Origin: Macrostomum lignano
Taxonomy: Eukaryota
NCBI GenBank assembly: GCA_002269645.1
Contig: NIVC01000619.1
Span: 1 to 64,000 of the forward strand
DNA length: 64,000 nt
Direction: 5' to 3'
Below the pieces are notes generated by a model. It was not told the DNA's origin and searched no databases. It saw nothing but the letters and a program-made list of their open reading frames with translations. Each line of letters starts with the position of its first letter. Position 1 is the stretch's first letter. Below, one piece after another: positions 2,757 to 51,874 of the stretch. The translations under genes and the position numbers were made by a program.

Positions 2757-2951
2757 CTAACCAATCCTGACACGAAGACGGACGAACTTCTTCTTCAGCT
2801 TCGGAAACTGCTCCTCCGACACGCTGGACTCGTCCAGGTTGGACAGAGTCTCCTCCAGCACACGTTCGGCCATGGCCTTCTCCTCCTGGCTGGGCACGGC
2901 GACGGCCAGGGCTGCGCACAGCAAAAGTCCGAGAGCGAGTTGCCACTTCAT
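2757..2951 (-). CDS. Secreted prepropeptide copy 1 (64 aa; C-terminus KLKKK-FVRLRVRI-G)
   Basis: MKWQLALGLLLCAALAVA signal-like N-terminus, acidic spacer, KKK, terminal Gly-stop; family promoter at 3033-3065; nine further paralogs in the window. Confidence 0.9.
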   Translation of the reverse strand: MKWQLALGLLLCAALAVAVPSQEEKAMAERVLEETLSNLDESSVSEEQFPKLKKKFVRLRVRIG

Positions 2952-6141: not shown

Positions 6142-6360
6142 ATGAAGTGGCAGATCGCTCTCGGACTTCTGCTGTGCGCAGCCCTGGCCGTCGCCGAGCC
6201 CTCACGAGAGGAGAAGGCTGAGGCCATGGCCGTTCTGGAGGCTCTGTCCAACGTTGACGAGTCCAGCATGTCGGAGGAGGCCGTGGACACCGCTAAGAAG
6301 TGGCTCAGAGTTAGGGCCAGGGTTAGGGTCGGATCCAGGAGGAGGTCTAGGTCCGGTTAG
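6142..6360 (+). CDS. Secreted prepropeptide copy 2 (72 aa; AKK-WLRVRARVRVGSRRRSRS-G)
   Basis: Same architecture as copy 1; promoter module 6028-6060; divergent pro-piece and extended Arg/Ser tail. Confidence 0.9.
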   Translation: MKWQIALGLLLCAALAVAEPSREEKAEAMAVLEALSNVDESSMSEEAVDTAKKWLRVRARVRVGSRRRSRSG

Positions 6361-7909: not shown

Positions 7910-8332
7910 CATCCCAAGACAGCAAGCATCCCCCAGATAGCAAGCATCTTCCAGATTACAAGCAACCCCCAGATAGCAAGCATCCCCCAGATAGCAAGCA
8001 TCCCCCAGATAGCAAGCATCCCCCAGATAGCAAGCATCCGCCAGATAGCAAGCATCTTCCAGATAGCAAGCATCCGCCAGATAGCAAGCATCTTCCAGAT
8101 TACAAGCAACCCCCAGATAGCAAGCATCCCCCAGATAGCAAGCATCCCCCAGATAGCAAGCATCCCCCAGATAGCAAGCATCCGCCAGATAGCAAGCATC
8201 TTCCAGATTACAAGCAACCCCCAGATAGCAAGCATCCCCCAGATAGCAAGCATCCCCCAGATAGCAAGCATCCGCCAGATAGCAAGCATCCCCTACATAG
8301 ATAGCATCCCCAAATAGCAAGCATCCACCAGA
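7910..8332. repeat. 18-bp minisatellite (CCCCCAGATAGCAAGCAT), about 23 units
   Basis: Direct tandem repetition visible; explains the low-complexity ORFs in several frames. Confidence 0.95.
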
Positions 8333-8394: not shown

Positions 8395-11160
8395 TTTTAT
8401 GTTTGAAATTGTGTAAATTTTATGTTTGACATGGTGGCTGTTTTAAGTTCTACATGGCAACTGTTTTATGTTTGAAACGATGGCTTTTTAATGTCAGACA
8501 TGGTGGCTCTTTTATGTTTTACATGGTGGCTCTTTAATGTTTAACCTGGTGGCTCTTTTATGTTTGAAACAGTGGCTCTTTTATGTTTGACACAGTGACT
8601 CTTTAATGTTCGAAATGGTGGCTCTTTAATGTTCGAAATGGTGGCTCTTTTATGTTTGACATGTTGGCTCTTTTATGTTTGACATGGTGGATCTTTAATG
8701 TTCGAAATAGTGGCTCTTTTATGGTCGACATGGTGGCTCTTTAATGTTCGAAATGGTGGCTCTTTAATGTTCGAAATAGTGGCTCTTTCATTTTCGACAT
8801 GGTGGCTCTTTATGTTTGACATGTTGGCTCTTTTATGTTTGACATGTTGGCTCTTTTATGTTTGACATGGTGGATATTTAATGTTCGAAATAGTGGCTCT
8901 TTTATGGTCGACATGGTGGCTCTTTAATGTTCGAAATGGTGGCTCTTTAATGTTCGAAATAGTGGCTCTTTTATTTTCGACATGGTGGCTCTTTAATGTT
9001 TGACATGGTGGCTCTTTAATGTTTTACATGGTTGCTCTTTTATGTTCGACATGGTGGCTCTTTAATGTTTGACATGGTAGCTCTGTTATGTCCGAAATGG
9101 TGGCTCTTTAATGTTTGACATAAAGTCACATATATGTTTGACATGGTGGCTCTTAAATGTTTGACATGGTGGCTCTTTATGTTTGACATGTTGGCTCTTT
9201 TATGTTCGAAATGGTGGCTCTTTTTTGTTCTACATGTTAACTCTTTTTATTTGATACGGTGGCTTTTTTAATGTCTGACATGTTGGCTCTTTAATGTTCG
9301 ACAAAGTGGCTCCTAAATGTTTGACATAGTGGCTCTTCAATGTTTGACAATGTGGCTTTTGAATGTTTGACATGGTGGCTCTTTAATGTTTGACATGGTA
9401 GCTCTGTTATGTTCGACATGGTGGCTCTTCTAGGTTTGACACGAAGGCTCTTAAATGTTTAACATGGTGGCTCTTTAATGTTTCACATGGTGGCTCTTTA
9501 ATGTTTTACATGGTGGCTCTTTTATGTTTAACTTGGTAGCGCTTTGTTATTTTACATGGCAGCTCTTTTATGTTCGACATGGTGGCTCTTTAATATTCTT
9601 CATGTTATAGCTCTTTCATGTTTGACATGGTGGCTCTTTAATGTTCGAAATGGTGGCTCTTTAATGTTTAACACAAAGTCACATATATGTTTGACATGGT
9701 GGCTCTTAAATGTTTGACATGGTGGCTCTTTATGTTTGACATGTTGGCTCTTTTATGTTTGACATGTTGGCTCTTTTATGTTTGACATGGTGGCTCTTTA
9801 ATGTTCGAAAAAGTGGCTCCTAAATGTTTGACATAGTGGCTCTTTGATGTTCGAAATAGTGACTCTTTTATTTTCGACATGGTGGCTCTTTAATGTTCGA
9901 AATGGTGGCTGTTTAATGTTAGAAATGGTGGCTCTTTTATGTTTGACATAAAGTCACTTATATGTTTTACATGGTGCCTCTTAAATATTAGACATGGTGG
10001 CTCGTTTAGGTTTGACGTGGTAGCTCTTTAATGTTCGACATGGTGGCTCTTTAATGTTCGACAAAGTGGCTCCTAAATGTTTGACATAGTGGCTCTTTAA
10101 TGTTTGACAATGTGGCTTTTGAATGTTTGACATGGTGGCTCGTTTTTGTTCGAAATGGTGGCTCTTTTTTGTTCTACATGGTAACTCTTTTATATTTAAT
10201 ACGGTGGCTTTTTTAAAGTCTGACATGTTGGCTCTTTTATGTTTGACATGGTGGCTCTTTAATGTTCGACAAAGTGGCTCCTAAATGTTTGACATAGTGG
10301 CTCTTTAATGTTTGACAATGTGGCTTTTGAATGTTTGACATGGTGGCTCTTTAATGATAGACATGGTGGCTCTTTTATGTTCGAAATGGTGGCTCTTTAA
10401 TGTTTAAAATAGTGGCTCTTTTATGTTCGATAAGGTGGCTCTTTAATGTTCGAAAAAGTGGCTCCTAAATGTTTGACATAGTGGCTCTTTGATGTTCGAA
10501 ATAGTGGCTTTTTTATGGTCGACATGGTGGCTCTTTAATGTTGGAAATGGTGGCTCTTTAATGTTCGAAATAGTGGCTCTTTTATTTTCGACATGGTGGC
10601 TCTTTAATTTCGAAATGGTGGCTGTTTAATGTTCGAAATGGTGGCTCTTTTATGTTTGACATAAAGTCACTTATATGTTTTAAATGGTGCCTCTTAAATA
10701 TTAGACATGGTGGCTCGTTTAGGTTTGACATGGTGGCTCTTTAATATTCGATATGTTAGCTCTTTTATGTTCGACATGGTGGCTCTTCTATGTTTGACAT
10801 GGTGGCTCTTTAATGATAGACATGGTGGCTCTTTGATGTTCGAAATAGTGGCTTTTTTATGGTCGACATGGTGGCTCTTTAATGTTGGAAATGGTGGCTC
10901 TTTAATGTTCGAAATAGTGGCTCTTTTATTTTCGACATGGTGGCTCTTTAATTTCGAAATGGTGGCTGTTTAATGTTCGAAATGGTGGCTCTTTTATGTT
11001 TGACATAAAGTCACTTATATGTTTTAAATGGTGCCTCTTAAATATTAGACATGGTGGCTCGTTTAGGTTTGACATGGTGGCTCTTTAATATTCGATATGT
11101 TAGCTCTTTTATGTTCGACATGGTGGCTCTTCTATGTTTGACATTGCGCTTCTTTTATGT
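8395..11160. repeat. 23-bp satellite (TGGTGGCTCTTTAATGTTYGAMA), about 120 units, with a ~344-bp higher-order duplication
   Basis: Tandem 23-mer; variant-rich block starting at 10501 recurs at 10845. Confidence 0.95.
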
Positions 11161-13091
11161 TTAGAAGTTTTGTGTTTTTAAGGTGTTTTAATAAAAAAAC
11201 TATTTTGCACTACTAAGATTCGAACCCAGGTCGCTACATTAGCATTCCAGTCTGTTCGCATCTGGGCTATCTCTTTTCAATTGGAGTACATCAATTGTGG
11301 CCCTTATAATTCAATTCTTACAGCAAGTCAATTAGAGTAAAAAGTTATGACATAATCAATTTCTCAGTCAGCCAGTATCAGTTTCAATTCAAGTTAGCAA
11401 TATTGGTTACGCAATTTAAATCAAGTCGTGTGTGCATTTCTTCGGCACTGTTTTCTACTTGTTGTGATGCAATCTTTATCAGAATTGAAATTCAGTCAGT
11501 CAGGTTTTTTTCTAGCATTCTTACAATGCATTTCAAGTCGAAAATTTTGCTTGACCTTTGCAAAAAAGCATGTTTTTCGAATATTTAATCCCTTTAACAT
11601 TGAGCAATTTCTTAGCCAAGATGCATGTACCGTCCCAGGAAAATTTCTGATCGAATGGTGCAAGTTTGAAGAAAATCGGTTGAGCCAATTTTTCTGAAAT
11701 CTATCGCATACCCACAGACAACTCATTTTTAGTATATAGGATGACATTGGTAAGTTGCAGGAGGCTTGTAGGGTCCCTGGCGTAATGCCTTTGGGACACT
11801 GCCTCACAACCAGCGCTGAGGCGATTCTGCCCATCCCGCTGACTCCTGAGCACGCAAGGCGCCAATACTGTACGCAGGCACGCACTCATGCACACGCTCA
11901 CCCAGGGTGTACAAAACGGTCCTGGATTTCCAATCCCCATGCATGTGCACTACCTGTGCTTTGGGGGTTGGCCGACGTCATGAGGGTATTTCGCACATCC
12001 ATCCACCCAGCACATCCATGAGCCTAATTATCAGAAAATTTAACGGTCTAAGTGAAGTACACTTTAGTAACAACAAACTTATGCTGCCGCACATACTGCT
12101 AATAAATAAACGCGAATTGGCCTGTTGCTTTCCAATATCAATGGGGTAAAGTTCTGTTCTTCGCCGATTATTTTATGTACTTAAAGACACTTTCTCAAAG
12201 ACGATTTGAGAGACATTCTCAGAAAAAAGTACTGTGTTTATACGCGCGTAATTAAGAATATGCAGACTCAGCGTTTTACCTTATAAAGCTATAAAATTTA
12301 TTCATTTTTTATGCCCGTATACTCAGTAATAACAACTTCATAATTTTCAGCATGATTTTCACAAGGAACGCTAGAAATTAGCGTTGTATCAGGACTTAGC
12401 ACTCGCGTTCAATGCAAACTTAGTCGAAGGCCCGTGTTGTGAACTTTGCAGTTAGACTTTAATATAAGTACCTTTTTCCTTACTACAATATTAATATATT
12501 TAAAATTAAATCTTGAATATTAAATCTTATTAAACACATATCTTTAAGTCTAAAGTTTAACTGCACTAATCTTTCGGATCTGTTGCATGTAGAGACATTT
12601 TTCACTAATTTGTTGACAATTTTGTTTATCATTCTTATAAAGCACAAATTAACTCGCTCGCGTTCGAAAGACTTTGGAGTCTTTGAATTTATTAGTGCAT
12701 AATTTTAAGGATCGCATTAATAATAAGCCAAAATATGCCGAAAGCTGATCAGTGCTTTAATTCGCACTTTATTCAATAAACAAACTTTGAAATAGCAACT
12801 TATCAAAAAAATAGTTGTCTAAAATGAATATCTTGCACCACTATATGTTCTAATTTATCGCTTTTGAGTTGCGTCGCAGAAATAAAATAATTTCAACCTA
12901 ACGAAGCATTGCTGAGTGCTTAAACTTATTGTGCTTGCTGTTTATATTTGGTAAAACTGATCAGCAAAGAGAGCTGTGTAAATTTCACCCTCAACACTAA
13001 ACAACAATGTGGTCAAGAGTCAGAGTTCAGAATCCGGTCAGTCATTTTCTATATGAAGCGACATCGATCTCAGATGCAGCGGAGAGCTCAT

Positions 13092-13280
13092 CTAACCGAA
13101 ATGAATATGGATGAACTTCTTCTTCAGCTTCGGGCTCTGCTCCTGCGACAGGCTGGACTCGTCCAGGTTGGACAGAGTCTCCTCCAGCACACGTTCGGCC
13201 TGGGCCTTCTCTTCTTGGGTGGGCATGGCGACGGCCATGGCTGCGAACAGCAAAAGTCCGAGAGCGAGTTGCCACTTCAT
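13092..13280 (-). CDS. Secreted prepropeptide copy 3 (62 aa; KLKKK-FIHIHF-G)
   Basis: Family architecture; promoter module 13365-13397. Confidence 0.9.
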   Translation of the reverse strand: MKWQLALGLLLFAAMAVAMPTQEEKAQAERVLEETLSNLDESSLSQEQSPKLKKKFIHIHFG

Positions 13281-16074: not shown

Positions 16075-16269
16075 CTAACCGATGTGGACCCTAACCCTGA
16101 AGATCTTCTTCTTCAGATCCATGGCCTTCTCCTCCGACACGTTGGGCTCGTCCAGGTTGGACAGAGTCTCCTCCAGCACACGTTCGGCCATGGCCTTCTC
16201 CTCCTGGCTGGGCACGGCGACGGCCAGGGCGGCGCACAGCAAAAGTCCGAGAGCGATCTGCCACTTCAT
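16075..16269 (-). CDS. Secreted prepropeptide copy 4 (64 aa; DLKKK-IFRVRVHI-G)
   Basis: Family architecture; promoter module 16351-16383. Confidence 0.9.
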   Translation of the reverse strand: MKWQIALGLLLCAALAVAVPSQEEKAMAERVLEETLSNLDEPNVSEEKAMDLKKKIFRVRVHIG

Positions 16270-19618: not shown

Positions 19619-19813
19619 ATGAAGTGGCAACTCGCTCTCGGACTTTTGCTGTGCGCAGCCCTGGCCGTCGCCGTGCCCAGCCAGGAGGAGAAGGCCATGG
19701 CCGAACGTGTGCTGGAGGAGACTCTGTCCAACCTGGACGAGTCCAGCGTGTCGGAGGAGCAGTTTCCGAAGCTGAAGAAGAAGTTCGTCCGTCTTCGTGT
19801 CAGGATTGGTTAG
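19619..19813 (+). CDS. Secreted prepropeptide copy 5 (64 aa; same protein as copy 1)
   Basis: Inverted-duplication partner of copy 1. Confidence 0.9.
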   Translation: MKWQLALGLLLCAALAVAVPSQEEKAMAERVLEETLSNLDESSVSEEQFPKLKKKFVRLRVRIG

Positions 19814-22040: not shown

Positions 22041-22235
22041 ATGAAGTGGCAGATCGCTCTCGGACTTTTGCTGTGTGCCGCCCTGGCCGTCGCCGTGCCC
22101 AGCCAGGAGGAGAAGGCCATGGCCGAACGTGTGCTGGAGGAGACTCTGTCCAACCTGGACGAGCCCAACGTGTCGGAGGAGAAGGCCATGGACCTGAAGA
22201 AGAAGATCTTCAGGGTTAGGGTCCGCATCGGTTAG
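22041..22235 (+). CDS. Secreted prepropeptide copy 6 (64 aa; DLKKK-IFRVRVRI-G)
   Basis: Family architecture; promoter module 21917-21949. Confidence 0.9.
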   Translation: MKWQIALGLLLCAALAVAVPSQEEKAMAERVLEETLSNLDEPNVSEEKAMDLKKKIFRVRVRIG

Positions 22236-23186: not shown

Positions 23187-23359
23187 GAGATCACTACTGA
23201 TTCTCTCGGGCCATTTTTTTCTTTCTATGCTTACAGAAACTCATTACCAAACTCCCTATCACTGCCTCTACCTCTCTGCGTCGCATTTCTTCCTCTCCGT
23301 CCCTCATCATCGCACTGTCTTTCTCTGTGAGTCTACGCTTATTTGATGAGCCCCCAATG
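23187..23359 (+). repeat. 173-bp direct repeat, left copy (partner 27072-27244)
   Basis: GAGATCACTACTGA...GAGCCCCCAATG appears identical in both copies by eye. Confidence 0.9.
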
Positions 23360-26300
23360 GAGTTGCGTTCCAGCTTACGCCAAGTGCCTTCGCGGTTGGT
23401 GATTCACCCTGCAGTAGTAGCTCAGCGCGTTCTGCCCTGTCTTCAACTGGAATCGATTGCAGGACTTCCTCAGAGTTCGAAAGCCACTTCCGAGCTCGCA
23501 TACCGGCTCTCTTCCACAGCTCCATCAGCTGCTCATACAACTGCTTTGCTTTCTCAACTGTCTCCATGGAGTCGAGACTGTCGTCCATGTAGGTGGACCT
23601 CAAAACCGTCGTTGCCGCCAAAGGCAGTTGATCCTGATGTTGCCTTGCATTCTCTTGTGCCACTAGTTGAGCCAGGAACGGGGAGCAGTTGACGCCAAAG
23701 ACCACGCTGCAGAACTCGTATACTTTTGGCTCACATTCCTTTTGCATTCCGCGCCACAAGAACCGAAAGAAGCGGCGATCATCTGGAGCCAACCGAATTC
23801 GAAGATACATTTCCTCAATATCACAAACTAGCGCGACCGGATGCTTGCGAAATCTTAGCAGCACGCTGACGAGATTGTTTTGCAGCTTCGGTCCGGTGTG
23901 GATGGCATCGTTAAGGCTGAGACCGCCACAGCGAGCAGACGCGTCAAAGACTATGCGAGTCTTTGTTGTCTCCTTGTCCGCTCTCACTACTGCAAAATGT
24001 GGCAGGTACCAACTTCCCTGACCGGCGGCTCCGTCGACTTCTTGAATGTAGCCCTTCTCCAGCTGTCCATCAAACACTCGCTGATACGCCTGCGCCAGCT
24101 CCGGGTTCTTCTTAAGCCGTTGCTCCGTATTAACGAGCCGCTGCCGCGCCATATCCTTGTTGTCTGGCAACGTTGTCGGATCCATCTTCCATGGGATCGC
24201 CACCTGGTAACGACCGGCCTCCATCCTCATTGAACTCTTCGTCAATTGAACGGTCTCTTGCTCTCCCATCGACAACGTGGCCATCGCTCCACCGTCGGGG
24301 ACCTCATCCACCTCCCAGAAACGCTTTAAAACGCCATCCAAGTCTCCATCCGCAATCGATAGGAAAGTCCTCTGTCGTCCAGCTTCCGGTCCGTAGTCCC
24401 TTATCGGTCCCACACACGTCCAACCGATCGGCGTCAGTCGCGCTGTCGGCTCTCCAGGTTGACCCCCGACCTCACGGCAGGCGAAGTGTAGATCAACGTG
24501 ATCGATGCCGATGAGCATGTCAACCGTCTGATTGCCTTCAACTCTGCTGAACGGAATGCCACGCAAATGATGCCACTGCGACGCTAGCTGACTCCAATCC
24601 ACGGCCTTCATATCACCCGTCACTTTCTCCGTGGTGTACGCCAAAACCCTAGCTCGAAACGCTCCATCAAGACTCTTCAAGTCCACTTCAACCGGCGCTG
24701 TCTGGAAGGTATTTACCTGTCCGTTGAGTACTTTAACGTTCATCTGCTCAAACTTCTCTTCCAGCCCAAGTTCGGCCGCCACGTCCGAGTTCAAATATGT
24801 TCTTGTGCTCGCATCATCCAGAAGCGCGTTGACTTGCACCTGTCGGTCTCCATTGGACAAGATCACCGGAACAGTTCGCAGCGCAACCGCAGCGGTCTCC
24901 CTAACTAGCAAAGTACAGGCTTCTCGCTGCTTGTTCATCGTCTCCTTCGGCCTCTCGCCTGAACTTGGCGCCTTGAGGACCTTCTGCGTCCCCCCTTCGT
25001 GGCGTGCCATCGACTCACTCTTTTGCGCTTGGTGGAGCAGCCGGTGATGCCTGGCCTTGCACCCGTCGATGCCGCAGCTTCGCAATCGTCTGCACGACAA
25101 ACTCATGTGGTTGCTTCCCAAGCACCCAAAGCACAGCTTCCACTCGCGTACCGCTGCCCATCGAGCTTCAACATCCATACGCGCAAACCTAGGGCACGCC
25201 CACACTCCATGCTGCTCTCCACAGAGACGACATAACCTACGGTTGTCTGTTGGTTCGACACTGCGACTTTCAGCGGCGTCGTTGTGAGTGAACAGTGTTC
25301 GCTGTGGTTCACGAGACCCTGACCACTTCTTCCCAGCTTCCCGACCGCCATCGCTCACCGGTACCACTCCTCGCGTCGCCTCCCACGCAATCGTCCGATA
25401 TTCAGCCTCCTGTAACAACCACTGATGGAGCACACTCAGCGAATCTACTTTAGAGTTCTCGCCCACCCACCGGTGATAGCGCGCCAAGGTGTCTGCGGGC
25501 AGCTTCCGCTGAACGCGCAAATGTAACAGGCCATTGCTACTTAGCTCAACGTCACGCCCAGCCGCCTTCAAATTATTCACGGTCACATCCAACAGGTCTG
25601 CCAACTTTTTTAACTGCGCTGCACTCTCCGTCTGAATCGGCCGAAAATTGTCCAAGTCTTCCAGAGCTAACGTTAATCTGCGTCTCTCTCCACCGTACTC
25701 TCGCTCTAAACGCTCTAGTGCAGACCGGTAGGCGAAAGCCGAGAACCCTAAATTCACAATAAGCTTAAGTGCCTCCCCTTGCAGGGATTGACGCAGCTGC
25801 AACAACTTGTACGCGTCTGAAGCCGGCGACTCATCCACACATGCATAGAAGGCAGCCTTCCACCCCTCATACTGCCGCTTGTCTCCTGAGAACACAGGAA
25901 TAGACACACGCTGCAATTGTCGCCACATGTCCTGTCCAATCCTAGCTGACTGATCCTCTGCGTACATTGCCGCCGCCTGCCCTGCTCCGCCAAATGATAG
26001 GCCAGCCCGCCACTCTGACTCAAATTGCCTAGGCCTTTCGTTTGCGCTAACTCCAGCCGGGCCAGTACGCGCAGTGTACATTTCGCTAATTGGGGTTGGC
26101 CGCCAGCCTGGATTGTTGATTGGCCACTCTTTGGGTTGCCACCCCTCCCCGTAGTTTGCGACTCCTCACGCGCTTCGTGTACACTTCGCGACTGAACTTG
26201 CTGCCGCTGAACTCCAACCACTCTGTCTAGCCTCTCCATTTCATACTCCAACTCCTTTTGCTTAGCCTCAAATGTTTCTCTCAACCGCTGTTGACGCTCT

Positions 26301-29300: not shown

Positions 29301-29495
29301 CTAACCGAACCTAACATGAACACGGACGAACTTCTTCTTCAGCTTCGGAATCTGCTCCTCCGACACGCTGGACTCGTCCAGGTTGGACAGAGTCTCCTCC
29401 AGCACACGTTCGGCCATGGCCTTCTCCTCCTGGCTGGGCACGGCGACGGCCAGGGCTGCGCACAGCAGAAGTCCGAGAGCGAGTTGCCACTTCAT
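29301..29495 (-). CDS. Secreted prepropeptide copy 7 (64 aa; KLKKK-FVRVHVRF-G)
   Basis: Family architecture; promoter module 29587-29619. Confidence 0.9.
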   Translation of the reverse strand: MKWQLALGLLLCAALAVAVPSQEEKAMAERVLEETLSNLDESSVSEEQIPKLKKKFVRVHVRFG

Positions 29496-31294: not shown

Positions 31295-34090
31295 CCCATA
31301 CGACTCCCCCCTCCAATTGCGGAGCACGGGGAAAAGAGACTGTAACTGAATTATAAAATGGTGGAATGGCTTAAATTATTGAAACGAAGCGGTTATACAG
31401 TTGAAATACGAGCTAAATTTATATGAGGGGTTGAACATTGAGAAATATTGAGAACAATGGAACAGCAGTCAGTAGACGTTATACATTACAAGGTTAATAA
31501 TAAATGTAATCATTATGGCGTCGGAATTGGACTCGGCGGCCGCTAGAGGTCGCTCTAGGAGTTGATGAGTCCATCGGTTCCTCTGGTTTGGCGGCTTCTT
31601 CCGGCAGCGAGTTCGCGGCCGGCTGAACAGCCGACTTCGGAAGCGAAAGTCGCGCCGGCTTGAGGCGATCGATAGAGACAGATTCGGTGTTGCCTGACGG
31701 TAGGAAAATAACGAAGAACTTGTCAGTTCGCTGTTTCACGCGATACGGCCCTGAGTACGGCGCCTCGAGCGGCGACCGCACGCGATCGACCCGAACCCAG
31801 ACGAATTCAGCCATTTCCAGGTCCTTGGGTACGTAGCTCCGTGGTTCGTGCGTCTTCGCGTGTGGACTCGGTAACTCTGTCAGCAGTTCCTGCAGCCGTG
31901 TCCGAATGTCCGTTGGGGCGAGTGGTTCAGAAGTTAGAATGCGCAGAACCATCGGAAGCTCGCCGGTAACCCTGGTGAACGGTGATATTCCTTGGTCGTC
32001 AGGTGCGACGTGCATCGCGAGGAGAGCCACAGGTAGGTCTGTCAGCCAGTCATTGCCTCGAGCACGTAGCATCGTCTTCAGGGTGCGATGGGCTCGCTCG
32101 ACCTTGCCATTGGTTTGAGGGTGGTAGGCCGTTGTGCGTAATCGATGAAAACCAATTGATGACGAGACCGAGTGAAAGAATTCTGATTCGAACTGGCGCC
32201 CCCGATCAGTGATTACATACAGTGGCACTCCGTAGCGCGAGACCCAAGACGAGACGAATGCATGGGCGACTACTTCCGCGGTTATTGATTCCAGTGGTGT
32301 AGCTTCTAGCCAGCCAGTCGAGCGGTCGACCATCGTGAGAAGGTAGCGGGCAGACTGGTGGCCAAAGGTGGTAGCATTAGCTGGTGGAAGTGGTCCCACA
32401 ATATCGATGTGTACCGCCTCAAAGCGATTTGATGGTAATGCGAAGGCCTGTTGCGGGGAGACAGTGTGGCGAGTGACTTTACTCCGTTGGCAGTCCTGGC
32501 AGTTCCAGCAGTAGGTCTTGATGGACTTGCGCATTCCGGGCCAAAAGTAACGTTCTGTGATGAGTTTTGCTGTTTTACGGTAGCCGAAATGACCAAGTCG
32601 ATGGAAGGAGGCAATTACGGCGTCGCGGAGAGACGGCGGAATGATCGGGCGAGGATACGGCGTTGACGTCTCACACCAAACGACGACGTCTTTGTCCAGA
32701 GAATACGATCGAATATTTGGTGCAGGTGAGAACGACTCCGGTCGTTGTGCTTCAGCGATACTGGGCAGATCAACAGGGAATTGGCTTGATGGGGCAGCGA
32801 CTACAGCGACTGTTGCGATGTTGGACACGCGATCATTCACTGGGAAGTCAGGCAGTCGAGAAAGGGCATCAGCTATTACGTTGTCTGCACCGCGAATGTA
32901 CTGGACATCTGCCACGTACTCGGACAAGATGGTCAAGTAGCGCTGATTGCGATCTGACGTAGTGGTGCGATTGGCGTGGAAGGCCTGAGCTAGTGGTTTA
33001 TGATCGGTGAACAAGGTCACGCTCAGTCCTTCAATGAGGTTGCGGAAGTGCAACACTGCCAGGTACGCCGCGAGTAGTTCTCGATCGAACGTGCTGTACA
33101 TCCTTTGAGATGATGACAACTTCTTGCTGAACATGCCAAGAGGTGACGTTCCGGTTGAAGAGGTTTGATGCAGAACGGCACCAACACAGTCGGCTGAGGC
33201 ATCAGTGTACAGGTGGTACGCAGTACAGTTGGGGTCCGGATGATGCAGCAGTAGTCTCTCTGAGAGAGCTTGTTTGATGTTTTCGAAAGATTTCTGATGC
33301 TGCTCTGCCCATTGGAAGTTTCCTGCTGACTGTAGTGATGCAGTGAGTAGGTCTTGCAGCGGACAGATGCGGTCGGCAAATTTGGGAACGAATCGACGGT
33401 AGAAACCGACGACACCGAGGAAGCGCCGAAGTGCGTTCGAATCCGTGGGTGTCGGCCAGTCAGTGATTATTTGGATCTTCTTCTGGAGAGGTTTTATTCC
33501 TTCAGGAGTCACGCGATGGCCAAGGAAATCTACCTCGGACTGAAAGAATTCGCACTTCTTCAAATGAACCTGTAGGCCGTGTGTTCTTAGGCGGTCCAAA
33601 ACTTGTTCCAAATGCGAGTAGTGGTCCTCACGAGTCTTTGAGAATATCAGGACATCATCGATGTAAGAGATGACGAATGACAGTCCGTGAAAAACAGAGT
33701 CGATGAAGCGTTGAAATGTTTGTGCTGCATTCCTCAGGCCGAAGGGCATGCGTGTGTACTCGAACAATCCAAACGGTGTGGTGATAGCGGTTTTGCAAAT
33801 ATCCTCTTCGGCGACTGGAATTTGATGAAAGGCGCGAACAAGGTCTAACTTTGAAAACACAGTGCTTCCGTGTAGGTACCGAGTGAAGGTTTGAATTTGT
33901 GGAACCGGATAGTTGTCCGGCTTTGTTTGTTTGTTCAATTCGCGATAGTCACCGCACGGACGCCAGCCAGCTCCCTTGGGTGCCATGTGGAGGGGTGACG
34001 CCCAAGGGCTTGAGGAAGGTCTGAGGTAGCCAGCATCGATTAGTTGCTGAAACTCCTGCTTTGCAGCCTGTAGTTTTGCAGGGTGCAGGA
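31295..34090 (-). mobile_element. 5'-truncated Ty3/Gypsy element (CsRN1-like) with uninterrupted RT-RNase H-integrase ORF (31494 to ~34090)
   Basis: [40 protein letters not shown] zinc finger (H..GH...C..C), HIDIVGP, ITDRG, NGKVER, C-terminal SSGRRVQF; polypurine tract GGAGGGGGGAG at 31304-31314. Confidence 0.92.
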
Positions 34091-35208
34091 TATTTTGTTG
34101 TACTTTTTATTTGCAACTCAGTTTGTCATAAATTACCATAGACTAATTTCCTTTTACAGTTCTTTCTCATAAACCCATAAGTTTATCATTTAGATGTACG
34201 AACTAAAAACATGTGCAGGAAAGCAACTGAAACAAGTGTCCATTAAAATAACTGCTACAAACACTGCCGGGTTGCTGAATTGTAGTGAAAATATTGGGTC
34301 AGGTGCGATGTATTAATTGTTTAAAAACATTGGTGATATTTTGAGTTGTAGAAGATGACAAGTTGTGACTTTAAAAAACTTATTTTGGGTGCATTTTGGG
34401 TTATTTTGGACCGAAAGCTTCCTGACGACTACTAGTCGATAAGACGGCGAGTCGATATGACTGAATTCTTAGAAACAGGGAAAATGATCGCAGAAATTGA
34501 ACCAAATAAAGCACACAGCTAAATAGAGACTCTGTGTGCACATTGATCTTTGTGTAGCAGCTTATACGGGGGCTTGTGGACAACCTTCTTAAACTGGCTG
34601 GCTTGCACATAACAATCACATTTCAATCATTAAGAATCACTCCAGAAAGTGCAAAAAATTCCAAAATTTTGAGCTCGTACATTAACCAAAATGAATAAGA
34701 GCGTGAAGTCGCATCTTATAGAATTAATACAAAAGCTTGTAGAATAGTTGGTTGCGTATATAGTCAAAATATAGACATGTGTAATACCGTATTAGCTTTC
34801 GTTTCAGTGTGAGAGCCTCGACCGGCTTCCGAACTCTTCCCGAACCCACCATACTCCATGACATGGGCCAAATTGATCAACCGCCATAGGCTCTCGTAAA
34901 CGTAACTTCGAAACTGACTAAATTCAAATAGACCAAACTGAAATACAAACATTTACACTAAAAAACGCTCGAGTTGAGGGTTACCTGTTTGATAGACAGC
35001 TTTCATCAAACAAGCAAAGGCTGCAGCATATTCGCAGTCTGTGCTCCACCCCGCTCACGTGACATCAATTCCAACGACTTTTCTCCTAGGACCGGAAACA
35101 CGTGCCAATCTGATGTGCATAAATTCGGAACTGCCGACTGCTCAACACAACAATCTCACATTCGACTCAATCTACACAGCTCGAAGACTCGACTCGACTC
35201 AAGCAATC

Positions 35209-35397
35209 ATGAAGTGGCAACTCGCTCTCGGACTTTTGCTGTTCGCAGCCATGGCCGTCGCCATGCCCACCCAGGAGGAGAAGGCCCAGGCCGAACGTGT
35301 GCTGGAGGAGACTCTGTCCAACCTGGATGAATCCAGCCTGTCGCAGGAGCAGAGCCCGAAGCTGAAGAAGAAGTTCATCCATATTCATTTCGGTTAG
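35209..35397 (+). CDS. Secreted prepropeptide copy 8 (62 aa; same protein as copy 3, FIHIHF-G)
   Basis: Family architecture; promoter module 35092-35124. Confidence 0.9.
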   Translation: MKWQLALGLLLFAAMAVAMPTQEEKAQAERVLEETLSNLDESSLSQEQSPKLKKKFIHIHFG

Positions 35398-36659: not shown

Positions 36660-36910
36660 GTCGCTAGTCGGACCGGGAACAGCGGAACCTTCCGACTGCT
36701 CAGAAACTTAACAATACAGCTACACACAGAAGGCCGTCGACAACGCTAAGAAGTGGCTAAGGGTTAGGGCTAGGGTTAGGATCGGTAAATCTGTCTGTCG
36801 CACAACATCTGTGATCAAACTCGCTTCATCGAAAGGCCAAGGCAAGGCTTGTGGGTACTAAGAGCTCACAGACAGCTGACACTACTCTGAACTCTGACCC
36901 GTGACCGCTT
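36660..36910 (+). pseudogene. Deleted pseudogene of the peptide family (copy-10 type)
   Basis: Promoter core lost; 5' UTR fused (ACACAG|AAGGCC) to KAVDNAKKWLRVRARVRIG; 1-nt deletion removes the stop; 3' flank matches copy 10. Confidence 0.85.
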
Positions 36911-39054: not shown

Positions 39055-39243
39055 ATGAAGTGGCAACTCGCTCTCGGACTTTTGCTGTTCGCAGCCATGG
39101 CCGTCGCCATGCCCACCCAGGAGGAGAAGGCCCACGCCGAACGTGTGCTGGAGGAGACTCTGTCCAACCTGGACGAGTCCAGCCTGTCGCAGGAGCAGAG
39201 CCCGAAGCTGAAGAAGAAGTTCATCCATATTCATTTCGGTTAG
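39055..39243 (+). CDS. Secreted prepropeptide copy 9 (62 aa; FIHIHF-G; one pro-piece Q to H change versus copy 8)
   Basis: Family architecture; promoter module 38938-38970; flanks homologous to copy 8. Confidence 0.9.
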   Translation: MKWQLALGLLLFAAMAVAMPTQEEKAHAERVLEETLSNLDESSLSQEQSPKLKKKFIHIHFG

Positions 39244-42365: not shown

Positions 42366-42566
42366 ATGAAGTGGCAAATCGCTCTCGGACTTTTGCTGTG
42401 CGCAGCCCTGGCCGTCGCCGTGCCCAGCCAGGAGGAGAAGGCCATGGCCGAACGTGTGCTGGAGGAGACTCTGTCCAACCTGGACGAGTCCAGCGTGTCG
42501 GAGGAGAAGGCCGTCGACAACGCTAAGAAGTGGCTCAGGGTTAGGGCTAGGGTTAGGATCGGTTAA
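42366..42566 (+). CDS. Secreted prepropeptide copy 10 (66 aa; AKK-WLRVRARVRI-G)
   Basis: Family architecture; promoter module 42242-42274. Confidence 0.9.
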   Translation: MKWQIALGLLLCAALAVAVPSQEEKAMAERVLEETLSNLDESSVSEEKAVDNAKKWLRVRARVRIG

Positions 42567-48742: not shown

Positions 48743-50950
48743 ATCTCAGTGCCTGTCTCAGCTTGTCAGTCGAGTTGTATCCTGTGTGTGTCTCAGTGCC
48801 TGCAACAGCTTGTCAGTCGAGTTGTATCCTGTGTGTGTCTCAGTGCCTGCAACAGCTTGTCAGTCGAGTTGTATCCTGTGTGTGTGTCTCAGTGCCTGCA
48901 ACAGCTTGTCAGTCGAGTTGTATCCTGTGTGTGTGTCTCAGTGCCTGCAACAGCTTGTCAATCGAGTTGTATCCTGTGTGTGTGTCTCAGTGCCTGCAAC
49001 AGCTTGTCAGTCGAGTTGTATCCTGTGTGTGTCTCAGTGCCTGCAACAGCTTGTCAGTCGAGTTGTATCTTGTGTGTCTCAGTGCCTGCAACAGCTTGTC
49101 AGTCGAGTTGTATCCTGTGTGTGTCTCAGTGCCTGCAACAGCTTGTCAATCGAGTTGTATCCTGTGTGTGTCTCTGTGCCTGCAACAGCTTGTCAGTCGA
49201 GTTGTATCCTGTGTGTGTCTCAGTGCCTGCAACAGCTTGTCAGTCGAGTTGTATCCTGTGTGTGTCTCAGTGCCTGCAACAGCTTGTCAGTCGAGTTGTA
49301 TCCTGTGTGTGTGTCTCAGTGCCTGCAACAGCTTGTCAGTCGAGTTGTATCCTGTGTGTGTGTCTCAGTGCCTGCAACAGCTTGTCAGTCGACTTGTATC
49401 CTGTGTGTGTCTCAGTGCCTGCAACAGCTTGTCAGTCGAGTTGCATCTTGTGTGTGTCTCAGTGCCTGCAACAGCTTGTCAGCCGAGTTGTATCCTGTGT
49501 GTGTCTCAGTGCCTGCAACAGCTTGTCAGTCGAGTTGTATCCTGTGTGTGTGTCTCAGTGCCTGCAACAGCTTGTCAGTCGAGTTGTATCTTTTGTGTCT
49601 CAGTGCCTGCAACAGCTTGTCAGTCGAGTTGTATCCTGTGTGTGTCTCAGTGCCTGCAACAGCTTGTCAGTCGAGTTGTATCCTGTGTGTGTGTCTCAGT
49701 GCCTGCAACAGCTTGTCAGTCGAGTTGTATCCTGTGTGTGTCTCAGTGCCTGCAACAGCTTGTCAGTCGAGTTGTATCTTGTGTGTCTCAGTGCCTGCAA
49801 CAGCTTGTCAGTCGAGTTGTATCCTGTGTGTGTCTCAGTGCCTGCAACAGCTTGTCAATCGAGTTGTATCCTGTGTGTGTCTCTGTGTCTGCAACAGCTT
49901 GTCAATCGAGTTGTATCCTGTGTGTGTCTCAGTGCCTGCAACAGCTTGTCAGTCGAGTTGTATCCTGTGTGTGTCTCAGTGCCTGCAACAGCTTGTCAGT
50001 CGAGTTGTATCCTGTGTGTGTGTCTCAGTGCCTGCAACAGCTTGTCAGTCGAGTTGTATCCTGTGTGTGTGTCTCAGTGCCTGCAACAGCTTGTCAGTCG
50101 ACTTGTATCCTGTGTGTGTCTCAGTGCCTGCAACAGCTTGTCAGTCGAGTTGCATCTTGTGTGTGTCTCAGTGCCTGCAACAGCTTGTCAGCCGAGTTGT
50201 ATCCTGTGTGTGTCTCAGTGCCTGCAACAGCTTGTCAGTCGAGTTGTATCCTGTGTGTGTCTCAGTGCCTGCAACAGCTTGTCAGTCGAGTTGTATCTTT
50301 TGTGTCTCAGTGGCTGCAACAGCTTGTCAGTCGAGTTGTATCCTGTGTGTGTCTCAGTGCCTGCAACAGCTTGTCAGTCGAGTTGTATCCTGTGTGTGTG
50401 TCTCAGTGCCTGCAACAGCTTGTCAGTCGAGTTGTATCCTGTGTGTGTCTCAGTGCCTGCAACAGCTTGTCAGTCGAGTTGTATCCTGTGTGTGTCTCAG
50501 TGCCTGCAACAGCTTGTCAGTCGAGTTGTATCTTGTGTGTCTCAGTGCCTGCAACAGCTTGTCAGTCGAGTTGTATCCTGTGTGTGTCTCAGTGCCTGCA
50601 ACAGCTTGTCAGTCGAGTTGTATCCTGTGTGTGTCTCAGTGCCTGCAACAGCTTGTCAGTCGAGTTGTATCCTGTGTGTGTCTCAGTGCCTGCAACAGCT
50701 TGTCAGTCGAGTTGTGTGTGTCTCAGTGCCTGCAACAGCTTGTCAGTCGAGTTGTATCTTGTGTGTGTCTCAATGCCTGCAACAGCTTGTCAGTCGAGTT
50801 GTATCCTGTGTGTGTCTCAGTGCCTGCAACAGCTTGTCAGTCGAGTTGTATCCTGTGTGTGTCTCAGTGCCTGCAACAGCTTGTCAGTCGAGTTGCATCC
50901 TGTGTGTGTCTCAGTGCCTGCAACAGCTTGTCAGTTGAGTTGTATCCTGT
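48743..50950. repeat. 45-49-bp satellite (GTCTCAGTGCCTGCAACAGCTTGTCAGTCGAGTTGTATCC + (TG)n), about 47 units
   Basis: Directly visible; the three 700+ aa ORFs are by-products. Confidence 0.97.

Positions 50951-51356: not shown

Positions 51357-51874
<518 letters not shown>

What the first reader, a model, noticed from the sequence alone, without database searches (positions are those of the whole stretch)
35362..35397. FIHIHF-amide: a natural look-alike of designed zinc-binding catalytic amyloid peptides, kept in three copies
Seen: copies 3, 8 and 9 encode the same KLKKKFIHIHFG although their flanks have diverged. Established: the designed heptapeptide IHIHIQI forms Zn-binding amyloid with esterase activity through His at i and i+2. 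Inference: the His variant could be a pH- or metal-switched member of the family (metal-binding fibril, metal-dependent antimicrobial), distinct from the Arg-rich members.
Basis: partly seen in the sequence, partly recalled or inferred. Interest (0 to 1): 0.7.

Follow-up and report, generated by a model that had tools for sequence, protein, structure and literature searches.

The report
Flatworm family of tiny histidine peptides
The flagged stretch is the end of a small secreted-peptide gene of the flatworm Macrostomum lignano, one of at least 150 related genes; about 70 of them encode 6-7-residue peptides that alternate histidine with greasy residues, which no one has studied and which resemble both antimicrobial peptides and man-made metal-binding "catalytic amyloid" peptides.

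Summary
The window is Macrostomum lignano DNA. It holds 10 intact intronless genes for 62-72-aa precursors. Each has a signal peptide, an acidic propiece, an invariant Lys-Lys, a 6-10-residue tail that alternates hydrophobic with Arg or His, and a terminal Gly. Copies 3, 8 and 9 all end in KLKKKFIHIHFG*.

The assembly holds 9 FIHIHF genes. It also holds 46 genes ending KK-GFHVHFH-G* and 15 ending KK-FHLHLP-GK*. Many of these lie 150 kb away on the same contig. So the His type is a major class of the family, not a rare variant.

The three window copies form a young clade that shares the tail by descent. That clade sits between the Arg-type genes and the large His-type cluster.

My best reading is a lineage-restricted, transcribed family of secreted peptides, cleaved after KK and C-terminally amidated, that form ultrashort amphipathic β-strands. 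The precursor layout is the one typical of host-defence peptides. The His class would be nearly uncharged at seawater pH, about +3 in acid, and would carry N-terminal Cu/Ni-binding (ATCUN-type) motifs.

The likeness to the designed peptide IHIHIQI is real at sequence level. Fibril formation, zinc binding, catalysis and killing are all untested. A neuropeptide-like role remains a serious rival.

The parts
35209..35397 (+). Copy 8: intronless gene for the 62-aa precursor MKWQLALGLLLFAAMAVA|MPTQEEKAQAERVLEETLSNLDESSLSQEQSPKLKK K|FIHIHF|G*
   Evidence: ORF. 100% tblastn self-match. Transcript-based NCBI gene models exist for identical proteins, Mlig015272 and Mlig022210.
35209..35262 (+). Predicted signal peptide (residues 1-18), with cleavage after AVA
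   Evidence: Hydrophobic core LALGLLLFAAMAVA with Ala at -3 and -1 (von Heijne rule; inference). It is the most conserved part of the family (invariant M1 K2 W3 Q4 L7 G8 L9 L10 A13 V17).
35263..35367 (+). Acidic propiece (residues 19-53)
   Evidence: Rich in Glu/Asp/Ser. It varies between subfamilies but is always anionic.
35368..35373 (+). Invariant Lys-Lys, the predicted prohormone-convertase cleavage site
   Evidence: K54 and K55 are invariant in all 17 aligned family members, although the residues on either side vary. A PC2 homologue is known in M. lignano (PMC4490696).
35374..35391 (+). Predicted mature peptide FIHIHF (TTC ATC CAT ATT CAT TTC)
   Evidence: Strict two-residue periodicity: muH(180 deg) 2.57 against muH(100 deg) 0.50. 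His at position 3 of the new N-terminus gives the X-X-His pattern.
35392..35397 (+). Terminal Gly (amide donor) and the TAG stop
   Evidence: G62 is invariant in the alignment. The sister subfamily ends in -GK*, the classic Gly plus basic amidation signal. Cu-monooxygenase (PHM/DBH-type) domains are present in the genome.
35092..35125 (+). Family-wide conserved upstream element CCGGAAACACGTGCCAATCTGATGTGCATAAATT (ETS-like GGAA, CACGTG E-box, TATA-like CATAAAT)
   Evidence: Conserved in position and sequence upstream of Arg-type and His-type genes alike. Function as a promoter is inferred. Some deposited gene models start upstream of it.
13092..13280 (-). Copy 3: FIHIHF precursor gene, same protein as copy 8
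   Evidence: 4 synonymous differences from copy 8, 0 nonsynonymous.
39055..39243 (+). Copy 9: FIHIHF precursor gene (Q27H in the propiece)
2757..2951 (-). Copy 1: paralogue ending KKK-FVRLRVRI-G*
6142..6360 (+). Copy 2: paralogue ending KK-WLRVRARVRVG-SRRRSRSG* (C-terminal extension)
16075..16269 (-). Copy 4: paralogue ending KKK-IFRVRVHI-G*
19619..19813 (+). Copy 5: paralogue ending KKK-FVRLRVRI-G*. It lies in an inverted duplicate of the copy-1 block (96% identity over 3.2 kb).
22041..22235 (+). Copy 6: paralogue ending KKK-IFRVRVRI-G*
29301..29495 (-). Copy 7: paralogue ending KKK-FVRVHVRF-G*, the closest Arg-type tail to FIHIHF (three G>A changes plus a 6-nt indel)
42366..42566 (+). Copy 10: paralogue ending KK-WLRVRARVRI-G*
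36728..36842 (+). Truncated remnant of a WLRVRARVRI-type gene. It keeps the last ~20 codons and the start of the 3' UTR. It has no start codon or signal peptide, and one base is missing at the Gly/stop junction.
   Evidence: Alignment with copy 10.

Best explanation
The flagged bases are the 3' end of one gene of a large, Macrostomum-restricted family of secreted-peptide precursors.

Each gene is a single small exon. It encodes a signal peptide, an acidic propiece, an invariant Lys-Lys, a 6-10-residue tail and a terminal Gly (or Gly-Lys).

The most likely processing has four steps, all inferred:
1. The signal peptide is removed.
2. A prohormone convertase cuts after KK.
3. Any C-terminal Lys is trimmed.
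4. The Gly is converted to a C-terminal amide.

The predicted products include FIHIHF-NH2 here, GFHVHFH-NH2 and FHLHLP-NH2 in the neighbouring cluster, and FVRLRVRI-NH2, IFRVRV(R/H)I-NH2, FVRVHVRF-NH2 and WLRVRARVRI-NH2 from the other window genes.

Every tail alternates hydrophobic with Arg or His. As a β-strand it would therefore have one greasy face and one cationic or His face.

I think the family acts as secreted membrane-active or self-assembling effector peptides of the host-defence type (inferred). The Arg class would be permanently cationic. The His class would be nearly uncharged and aggregation-prone at seawater pH. It would become about +3 in acidic compartments. It would also carry a high-affinity N-terminal Cu(II)/Ni(II) site (X-X-His in FIH- and GFH-, X-His in FH-) plus HxH motifs able to bridge Zn between strands.

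The FIHIHF genes are a young, monophyletic sub-clade. That clade lies between the Arg-type genes and the amplified His-type cluster.
For: Organism and reality of the genes:
- The homologues that carry a name are all M. lignano hypothetical proteins.
- The deposited annotation is built from RNA-seq transcripts (PMC5730564). It includes FIHIHF models Mlig015272.g1-3 and Mlig022210.g2.

Architecture:
- Signal-peptide residues, KK and the terminal G are invariant across 17 divergent members.
- A -GK* ending occurs in one subfamily.
- A PC2 homologue is known, and PHM/DBH-type domains are present.

Constraint:
- The 9 FIHIHF genes show 5 variable coding sites, 4 synonymous and 1 nonsynonymous, none of them in the tail. 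Binomial P is about 0.01.
- Of 46 GFHVHFH tails found while allowing 2 mismatches, the only 4 variants are all synonymous or stop-to-stop. P is about 9e-4, or about 0.012 if only transitions are counted (and my arithmetic).
- In the window, CDS identity is about 98%, against 57-89% in the 3' UTR of the same duplicated unit.

Pattern: all 13 distinct tails have muH(180 deg) far above muH(100 deg).

Host-defence-like layout:
- The prepro region is conserved and the tail is hypervariable. Nonsynonymous change per site is 0.54 in the tail against 0.12 in the signal peptide.
- Distant members carry Pro/Arg-repeat, Trp/Arg-rich and Cys-pair cationic tails.
- The genes sit in large tandem arrays that share one upstream element.
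- Designed 8-mers with the same alternation and a C-terminal amide (IRIKIRIK-NH2) are antimicrobial (PMC4330034).

Metal site: piscidin 3 starts with FIH and binds Cu(II) with picomolar affinity through this motif (PMC6862162).

Phylogeny: three clades with bootstrap support 95, 99 and 100.
Against: - No peptide has been detected. Cleavage after KK, amidation and the resulting N-terminus are all predictions. If the N-terminus differs, the ATCUN argument falls.
- I found no tissue, induction or infection data.
- There is no homology to any known antimicrobial family. Pfam gives only sub-threshold noise.
- Six to eight residues is at the lower limit for natural antimicrobial peptides. The animal lives in seawater, where salt weakens short cationic peptides. 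At pH about 8 the His peptides carry almost no charge.
- Gene conversion could help explain the near-identity of the paralogues. Site patterns are mosaic between allelic pairs.
- Short, amidated, dibasic-flanked peptides are also what neuropeptide genes encode.
Confidence: 0.55

Rival explanations
1. The peptides are neuropeptides or hormone-like signals, or secreted mimics of such signals (for example transferred to a mating partner), acting on receptors rather than on membranes or metals.
For: - The peptides are short, C-terminally amidated and flanked by a dibasic site. That is the standard prohormone design.
- Flatworm neuropeptides include (A/G)FVR(I/L)amide (NPP-1), AVRLMRLamide and GLRLMRLamide (PMC2953531; PMC6797213). 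The tails FVRLRVRI and FVRVRVRL resemble these locally.
- M. lignano has a PC2 homologue that is needed for development.
Against: - The assembly holds at least 150 loci in tandem arrays.
- Each precursor carries one peptide, not the multi-copy layout of NPP-1.
- The tails are hypervariable and include 30-residue Pro/Arg repeats.
- Among 1.84 billion cluster representatives, the only matches apart from one weak, dissimilar hit (P0022) are M. lignano proteins and one unattributed genomic contig. Flatworm neuropeptides, in contrast, are shared across the phylum.
- The binary Arg/His-hydrophobic pattern is conserved rather than a specific sequence.
Confidence: 0.2
2. One reading: FIHIHF-NH2 (and its His-type relatives) self-assembles with Zn2+ or Cu2+ into β-sheet fibrils that are catalytic or redox-active, as a natural counterpart of the designed IHIHIQI-type catalytic amyloids.
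For: - The peptide shares the IHIH core, the strict alternation and the predicted C-terminal amide.
- The designs need only about 7 residues with His at i and i+2, and they work with Zn (esterase) or Cu (phosphoesterase, where aromatic residues are needed) (PMC8431744).
- Near-neutral charge at pH 7.4-8.1 favours assembly.
- The His class is amplified to about 70 loci, and its tails show only synonymous variation.
Against: - Nothing was tested.
- The natural peptide is shorter (6 residues). Its hydrophobic face has 3 residues rather than 4.
- It has a charged free N-terminus that would bind Cu(II) as a monomeric ATCUN chelate rather than bridge strands.
- No substrate or biological need for such catalysis is evident.
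- The Arg-type paralogues with the same layout cannot bind metal this way. That argues for a shared function that does not depend on metal.
Confidence: 0.1
3. The His-type peptides serve metal handling (secreted Cu/Ni/Zn chelators for detoxification or supply) or act as metal-crosslinked structural material, rather than in defence.
For: - There are predicted X-X-His or X-His N-termini and HxH(xH) motifs in all three His-type tails.
- The gene dosage is very high.
- His-metal crosslinking of secreted proteins is known in other marine invertebrates (my own knowledge, not checked here).
Against: - The peptides share their origin and promoter element with Arg-type peptides that have no metal ligands.
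- They are very small for a structural role.
- I have no expression data.
Confidence: 0.07
4. The conserved tail has no activity of its own. The three identical copies only reflect recent duplication, gene conversion and assembly redundancy, and the genes are drifting or non-functional.
For: - The FIHIHF clade is young (2.2% divergence).
- Mosaic site patterns suggest gene conversion.
- The assembly is known to be redundant, and each window copy has a near-identical twin on C181.
- With only 5 variable sites in 186 nt, zero changes in the 36-nt tail is not significant on its own (my arithmetic: about 1 expected).
Against: - All 9 ORFs are intact, with a 4:1 ratio of synonymous to nonsynonymous changes.
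- The CDS is far more conserved than the 3' UTR of the same unit.
- Decayed copies do exist and look different: they have stops, frameshifts or truncation.
- The 46-copy GFHVHFH class shows only synonymous variants.
- Gene models are transcript-based.
Confidence: 0.08

Closest known systems
Designed catalytic amyloid heptapeptides (Ac-IHIHIQI-NH2, Ac-IHIHIYI-NH2, LHLHLXL series)
   Same: Alternating hydrophobic/His sequence with His at i and i+2. The IHIH core is identical. C-terminal amide (predicted here). Length 6-7 residues.
   Different: The natural peptides are gene-encoded and cut from a precursor. They have a free (not acetylated) N-terminus, an aromatic first and last residue, and only three residues on the hydrophobic face. 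Assembly, Zn binding and catalysis are untested.
ATCUN-motif host-defence peptides (piscidin 1 FFH..., piscidin 3 FIH...; histatin 5 from my own knowledge)
   Same: Predicted free N-terminus with His at position 3. FIH- is literally the start of piscidin 3. His-rich and pH-sensitive.
   Different: Piscidins are 22-residue amphipathic helices. These peptides are 6-7-residue β-strand-patterned. There is no sequence homology between the precursors.
Designed β-sheet-forming antimicrobial peptides (IRIK)2-NH2 / IRIKIRIK-NH2
   Same: An 8-residue, C-amidated, strictly alternating hydrophobic/cationic design, very close to FVRLRVRI-NH2 and IFRVRVRI-NH2.
   Different: Those are synthetic and use Arg/Lys only. 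No natural gene family of this design was found in the literature searched.
Prepro-antimicrobial peptide families with a conserved prepro region and hypervariable mature peptide (amphibian preprodermaseptins, cathelicidins; my own knowledge)
   Same: Highly conserved signal peptide, acidic propiece, basic cleavage site, hypervariable cationic C-terminal peptide, frequent Gly amidation, tandem multigene arrays.
   Different: No sequence homology. The mature peptides are much shorter. The cleavage site is KK rather than KR. The host is a flatworm.
Flatworm I/L-amide neuropeptides (NPP-1: AFVRLamide, GFVRIamide) and myomodulin-like AVRLMRLamide
   Same: Short, amidated, hydrophobic-Arg-hydrophobic sequences ending in I/L-amide. 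Same phylum. Dibasic processing.
   Different: NPP-1 precursors carry several peptide copies and are conserved across flatworms. This family has one C-terminal peptide per precursor, at least 150 loci, and no detectable homologues outside Macrostomum-like data.
Carbonic anhydrase zinc-binding strand (His-x-His on a β-strand), the template for the designed amyloids
   Same: HxH on an alternating strand. The review states that the designs copy the carbonic anhydrase Zn site.
   Different: That is a strand inside a folded enzyme, with a third His supplied from elsewhere. It is not a free peptide.

Membership tests
Designed Zn-dependent catalytic amyloid peptides (IHIHIQI type) | Alternating hydrophobic/His sequence with His at i and i+2 | tested here: met
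   FIHIHF has His at 3 and 5 with I, I, F on the other face. GFHVHFH has His at 3, 5 and 7.
Designed Zn-dependent catalytic amyloid peptides (IHIHIQI type) | Capped termini (N-acetyl, C-amide) | tested here: not met
   A C-amide is predicted from the invariant terminal Gly. Cleavage after KK would leave a free N-terminal amine, and nothing in the sequence indicates acetylation. Both points are predictions from sequence.
Designed Zn-dependent catalytic amyloid peptides (IHIHIQI type) | Zn2+-dependent β-sheet fibril formation | not testable with these tools
   Needs synthetic peptide with ThT, CD and EM. Only a charge calculation is available.
Designed Zn-dependent catalytic amyloid peptides (IHIHIQI type) | Esterase activity (pNPA hydrolysis) in the fibril state | not testable with these tools
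   Bench assay needed.
ATCUN (amino-terminal Cu/Ni-binding) peptides | Free N-terminal amine with His at position 3 (and no Pro at position 2) | tested here: inconclusive
   Met at sequence level for FIH-IHF and GFH-VHFH if cleavage falls directly after the invariant KK. The real N-terminus has not been observed. FHLHLP has His at position 2 instead.
ATCUN (amino-terminal Cu/Ni-binding) peptides | High-affinity square-planar Cu(II)/Ni(II) binding | not testable with these tools
   Needs UV-vis, EPR or ITC on synthetic peptide. Piscidin 3, which has the same FIH start, binds with picomolar affinity.
Host-defence (antimicrobial) peptide precursor families | Signal peptide + anionic propiece + basic cleavage site + cationic amphipathic mature peptide | tested here: met
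   Alignment A2, charge and hydrophobic-moment table, distant members with Pro/Arg and Trp/Arg tails. The His-type tails are cationic only below about pH 6.5.
Host-defence (antimicrobial) peptide precursor families | Conserved prepro region with a fast-evolving mature region, in multigene arrays | tested here: met
   Nonsynonymous changes per site are 0.54 (tail), 0.24 (propiece) and 0.12 (signal peptide). At least 150 loci lie in clusters.
Host-defence (antimicrobial) peptide precursor families | Antimicrobial activity, or induction by or exposure to microbes | not testable with these tools
   No expression or activity data found.
Host-defence (antimicrobial) peptide precursor families | Sequence homology to a described antimicrobial family | tested here: not met
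   Pfam gives only sub-threshold hits, for example Defensin_propep at E = 0.068. Every named hit in the protein searches is an M. lignano hypothetical protein.
Flatworm neuropeptide prohormones (NPP-1 I/L-amides) | Short amidated peptide flanked by basic cleavage sites | tested here: met
   KK ... G* or GK*.
Flatworm neuropeptide prohormones (NPP-1 I/L-amides) | Several peptide copies per precursor, and conservation across flatworms | tested here: not met
   One tail per precursor. A profile search of 1.84 billion representatives found only 11 proteins. Those with a source name are all M. lignano.
Flatworm neuropeptide prohormones (NPP-1 I/L-amides) | Neuronal expression and receptor-mediated activity | not testable with these tools
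   No localisation data found.

The most novel reading that the evidence does not exclude
Macrostomum lignano makes, from about 70 dedicated genes, 6-7-residue His-x-His(-x-His) peptide amides. Once secreted, these assemble with Zn2+ or Cu2+ into β-sheet fibrils or films with catalytic or redox activity. That would be the first gene-encoded natural counterpart of the designed catalytic amyloids, switched on and off by pH and metal.
Probability: 0.1. Interest if true: 0.9.

Novelty: new variant of a known kind. Interest (0 to 1): 0.6.

Why it matters
If the predicted products exist, this is a natural, heavily amplified family of the shortest kind of amphipathic β-strand peptide. Chemists reached the same designs independently, both as antimicrobials (IRIK-type 8-mers) and as catalytic amyloids (IHIH-type 7-mers).

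The family offers Arg and His versions of one scaffold, made from precursors that are otherwise alike. That is a ready-made comparison for asking what histidine adds: pH gating, copper or zinc binding, or self-assembly.

Free-living flatworms also have almost no described host-defence peptides, so this family could fill that gap.

Every question here can be tested directly with cheap synthetic hexa- to decapeptides and with the RNAi, in situ hybridisation and transgenesis methods already available for M. lignano.

Tried and rejected
Family-wide statistics therefore rest on the window, 30 short loci and 20 ten-kb stretches. Tail counts come from pattern searches.
- Exact look-ups of the FIHIHF precursor in public assemblies returned nothing, possibly because records of the window's own genome are left out.
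- I found no expression or tissue data. The gene ids Mlig015272, Mlig022210, Mlig010443, Mlig012700, Mlig015779 and Mlig004045 are absent from the held supplements of four M. lignano papers and from all full texts. Two further papers have no held supplements.
- The peptide strings FIHIHF, FHVHFH, FHLHLP, VRLRVRI and RVRARVRI occur in no held paper.
- A search for papers on M. lignano antimicrobial peptides found nothing relevant.
- McVeigh 2009 on flatworm neuropeptides is not held.
- Pfam gave no domain. I rejected the faint hits (Lock_Gag1-like, Defensin_propep, DUF4576) as low-complexity or signal-peptide noise.
- I dropped grouping genes by identical tail to 'show' zero nonsynonymous change, because it is circular. 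I replaced it with mismatch-tolerant pattern searches.
- I did not run structure prediction. A 6-residue product and a 62-aa mostly disordered precursor would not give a decisive model.
- I considered and rejected the idea that FIHIHF is a decayed Arg-type tail. All 9 copies are intact, and real decayed copies look different.
Full report
**What is at the coordinates**

Window 35359-35397 (+) reads KLKKKFIHIHFG followed by a stop. The finding's start, 35362, is the Leu codon. This is the end of a 62-codon intronless ORF at 35209-35397. The ORF encodes MKWQLALGLLLFAAMAVAMPTQEEKAQAERVLEETLSNLDESSLSQEQSPKLKKKFIHIHFG.

A tblastn of this protein against the window finds ten intact relatives:
- Copies 3 (13092-13280, -), 8 and 9 (39055-39243, +) end in FIHIHFG.
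- The other seven end in FVRLRVRIG (two copies), IFRVRVHIG, IFRVRVRIG, FVRVHVRFG, WLRVRARVRIG and WLRVRARVRVGSRRRSRSG.

**Organism and status of the genes**

Protein searches return Macrostomum lignano 'hypothetical proteins' as the only named relatives. The window's assembly has 764 Mb in 5,269 contigs.

The deposited annotation of that assembly is derived from RNA-seq-based, genome-guided transcripts (PMC5730564). It contains models for the FIHIHF precursor: Mlig015272.g1-3 and Mlig022210.g2. I take this as indirect evidence of transcription.

Several models extend the reading frame upstream of the conserved Met. That extension is not conserved in the family and is closed by stop codons in some paralogues (open-frame lengths). 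I treat MKWQ as the true start.

No paper in the searchable library mentions these genes or peptide strings.

**How many copies, and are the flanks really diverged?**

The 30-nt string encoding KKFIHIHFG* occurs nine times in the assembly, always without a mismatch. The reversed control pattern occurs zero times.

Comparing 3.2-kb loci gives the following:
- Each window copy has a twin on contig C181: 99.2%, 97.1% and 99.8% identity over 2.7-3.2 kb.
- The C1713 and C3608 copies are a similar pair.
- Between true paralogues, homology covers only about 335-390 bp, or 624 bp for copies 8 and 9, or about 1 kb for copy 3 against the C2803/C1713 group.

The twins fit the documented redundancy of this assembly, which comes from a line with extra large chromosomes.

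Within the window, identity by region is:

| Region | Identity |
|---|---|
| CDS | 97.9-98.4% |
| -135 to -1 | 94.7-97.8% |
| Upstream of -135 | about 65% |
| 3' UTR | 57-89% |

So the core is much better preserved than the rest of the same duplicated unit. Part of the 'diverged flanks' is simply DNA outside a small duplicated unit.

**Selection on the FIHIHF genes**

Across the nine genes there are five variable coding sites. Four are synonymous and one is Q27H in the propiece. None lies in the tail. With 41 synonymous and 145 nonsynonymous sites, four or more synonymous changes out of five has P of about 0.01. This points to purifying selection on the precursor as a whole.

It says little about the tail itself. 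About one change would be expected in 36 nt, so zero is unremarkable.

Site patterns are mosaic between allelic pairs. Gene conversion may therefore contribute to the similarity.

**The larger picture: the His type is a major class**

I fetched the more distant matches on the same contig (C619:154-203 kb) and on C181 and C570. These regions hold dozens of paralogues ending ...KLRKK-GFHVHFH-G* or ...KLRKK-FHLHLP-GK*.

Pattern searches allowing two mismatches find the following:
- **GFHVHFHG\*: 46 tails.** Forty-two are exact. The four variants are AAG>AAA, CAC>CAT, CAT>CAC and TAG>TAA, so all are silent. If mutations hit the 33 nt at random, four silent changes out of four has P of about 9e-4. 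It is about 0.012 if only transitions are considered (my arithmetic).
- **FHLHLPGK\*-type: 15 tails.** Three of these read FHFHLP or FRFHLP and sit in copies with a lost start codon, frameshifts or stop codons.

About 70 of the at least 150 family loci are therefore His-type. The class is maintained, not drifting.

**Family anatomy**

An alignment of 17 divergent members has these invariant columns: most of the signal peptide (M1 K2 W3 Q4 L7 G8 L9 L10 A13 V17), P20, a Lys-Lys pair immediately before the tail, and the terminal Gly. The residues before KK vary (PKLK, PKLR, SKLE, MDLK, DNA, ELQ). This singles out KK as the functional element.

One subfamily ends in -GK*, the textbook 'Gly plus basic residue' amidation signal. 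M. lignano has a PC2 homologue (PMC4490696). Its genome also has many PHM/DBH-type copper monooxygenase domains.

From this I infer the processing: signal peptide off after AVA, cut after KK, Gly converted to a C-terminal amide.

All 13 distinct predicted products have a strict two-residue period. The hydrophobic moment at 180 degrees is 2.6-3.7, against 0.2-1.3 at 100 degrees. As β-strands they would be amphipathic.

**Shared regulation**

Arg-type and His-type genes share an upstream block, CCGGAAACACGTGCC(A/G)ATC(C/T)GATG..(C/T)ATAAAT, about 90-125 nt before the ATG. They also share a more distal palindromic element. Its role as a promoter is inferred. Some deposited models begin upstream of it.

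**Phylogeny**

A maximum-likelihood tree was built on the 130 nt upstream plus the coding region up to KK, excluding the tail. It gives three supported clades: FIHIHF (bootstrap 95), Arg-type (99) and the His-type cluster (100).

| Comparison | Mean divergence |
|---|---|
| Within FIHIHF | 0.022 |
| FIHIHF to Arg-type | 0.136 |
| FIHIHF to His cluster | 0.193 |
| Arg-type to His cluster | 0.228 |

The three window copies thus share their tail by recent descent, and the clade sits between the other two.

Against the closest Arg-type tail, the FIHIHF codons differ by three G>A transitions and a 6-nt indel:
- FVRVHVRF: TTC GTC CGT GTT CAT GTT AGG TTC
- FIHIHF: TTC ATC CAT ATT CAT TTC

Which state is ancestral depends on the root, and I could not fix it. 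More distant members have Arg-rich tails. This hints that the His type arose once, with FIHIHF as its early branch.

**Breadth of the superfamily**

A profile search of 1.84 billion cluster representatives found only 11 proteins. Apart from one weak, dissimilar hit, they are M. lignano proteins plus one 929-bp genomic contig from run SRR31628392. That contig has a similar upstream layout.

The distant members keep the signal peptide and acidic propiece but carry very different cationic tails:
- FLRVRLPRVRMPRVRLPRVRLPRLRVRFRWSKK
- WRRRRRFRWRKAIRVAGKVAKAVL
- WRIKSACKIFRRLLHLARKCYAKKG
- WFSRWFRITYRRRGGERRYLRSYFRLG

Nonsynonymous change per site is highest in the tail (0.54), lower in the propiece (0.24) and lowest in the signal peptide (0.12). 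This combination of a conserved prepro region and a hypervariable cationic tail in tandem arrays is typical of host-defence peptide families (my own knowledge of amphibian and mammalian examples). It is the main reason I rank that reading first.

**What histidine would add**

With a free N-terminus and an amidated C-terminus, FIHIHF-NH2 would carry about +2.7 at pH 5.5, +0.9 at pH 7.4 and +0.5 at pH 8.1. The Arg-type peptides stay at +2.5 to +5. The His peptides would therefore be hydrophobic and prone to assemble in sea water, and cationic in acidic compartments.

If cleavage is directly after KK, FIH- and GFH- place His at position 3 of a free N-terminus. That is the ATCUN Cu(II)/Ni(II) pattern. 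Piscidin 3 begins with the same FIH and binds Cu(II) with picomolar affinity (PMC6862162). FHLHLP has His at position 2.

The HxH and HxHxH arrangement is the one exploited in the designed Zn-dependent catalytic amyloids, of which IHIHIQI is the best known. Aromatic variants of those designs work with Cu (PMC8431744).

The differences are that the natural peptide is shorter, has a three-residue hydrophobic face and is not N-acetylated. None of the physical properties can be tested here.

**Rivals**

The neuropeptide reading deserves weight. Flatworm neuropeptides include (A/G)FVR(I/L)amide and AVRLMRLamide, which look locally like FVRLRVRI-amide. Four things count against it:
- the copy number;
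- the single-peptide precursors;
- the extreme variety of tails;
- the absence of homologues in other flatworms.

I give lower weight to a pure metal-handling or structural role, and to 'no function of its own'.

**Verdict**

The sequence likeness and the pH and metal logic hold. 'Three kept copies of a variant' misdescribes what is in fact a large His-type class. The amyloid and catalysis idea remains a low-probability, high-interest conjecture.

The family itself is uncharacterised. It can be tested directly by peptidomics, in situ hybridisation and cheap synthetic peptides.

Noticed in passing
G000:C619:154000-203000 (loci L046-L050); also C181:582-646 kb and C570:349-427 kb: A second tandem cluster lies on the window's own contig. 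It holds about 15 genes per contig copy for GFHVHFH-amide and FHLHLP-amide precursors, in both orientations, roughly one gene every 2-4 kb.
   Followed up: yes
window 36728-36842 (+): A truncated remnant of a WLRVRARVRI-type gene lies between copies 8 and 9. It keeps the last ~20 codons and the start of the 3' UTR. The start codon and signal peptide are gone, and one base is missing at the Gly/stop junction.
   Followed up: yes
window 6142-6360 (+): Copy 2 runs past the usual terminal Gly into an extra SRRRSRSG. Either the stop was lost or a second basic module was added. It also sits on a very long branch in the tree.
   Followed up: partly
window 2319-5478 vs 20251-17091: A 3.2-kb inverted segmental duplication (96.2% identity) carries copies 1 and 5. 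A second block, 5486-6279 vs 16934-16129 (94.8%), links the upstream region and first ~46 codons (nearly two thirds of the CDS) of copy 2 with those of copy 4. The cluster grew by local inverted duplications.
   Followed up: partly
window 31494-34106 (-), 23307-26165 (-), 286-888 (-): Retrotransposon ORFs are interspersed with the peptide genes. One is an 870-aa RT-RNaseH-integrase frame (Ty3/gypsy-like), one is a 952-aa DUF1759 + protease + RT frame (Bel/Pao-like), and one is an RT fragment.
   Followed up: partly
window 7913-8332, 8418-11162, 48744-50950, 51357-51874, 63576-63788: Large tandem arrays are present: an 18-bp unit x23, a 23-bp unit x119 (2.7 kb), a 47-bp unit x47 (2.2 kb), TCTA x129, and a 23-bp unit x9.
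   Followed up: no
G000:C861:376-425 kb, C757:32-66 kb, C4862, C3975: PF01082 (copper type II monooxygenase, PHM/DBH-like) hits 46 places in the genome. These include tandem clusters of long single-frame ORFs of 490-670 aa. This is an unexpectedly expanded family that might relate to the heavy demand for peptide amidation.
   Followed up: no
L051 (Logan SRR31628392 contig, gene 541-813): A genomic contig from an unattributed sequencing run encodes a family member with a Pro/Arg-repeat tail (FLRVRLPRVRMPRVRLPRVRLPRLRVRFRWSKK). It has a similar GGAAA...CATAAAT upstream layout. It probably comes from another Macrostomum species or strain.
   Followed up: partly
L032:8004-8191, L039:992-1179, L049:528-715: Decayed His-type copies are present (FRFHLP and FHFHLP tails). 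Their start codon has changed to ATA and they carry frameshifts or in-frame stops. This shows what non-functional members of the family look like.
   Followed up: partly
window 35092-35125 and the equivalent position of every family gene: A conserved upstream block combines an ETS-like CCGGAAAC, a CACGTG E-box and a TATA-like box. A distal palindrome, TTGACTGACAGCTGTCGTCAA, lies about 200 nt upstream. These are candidate handles for a reporter transgene.
   Followed up: partly
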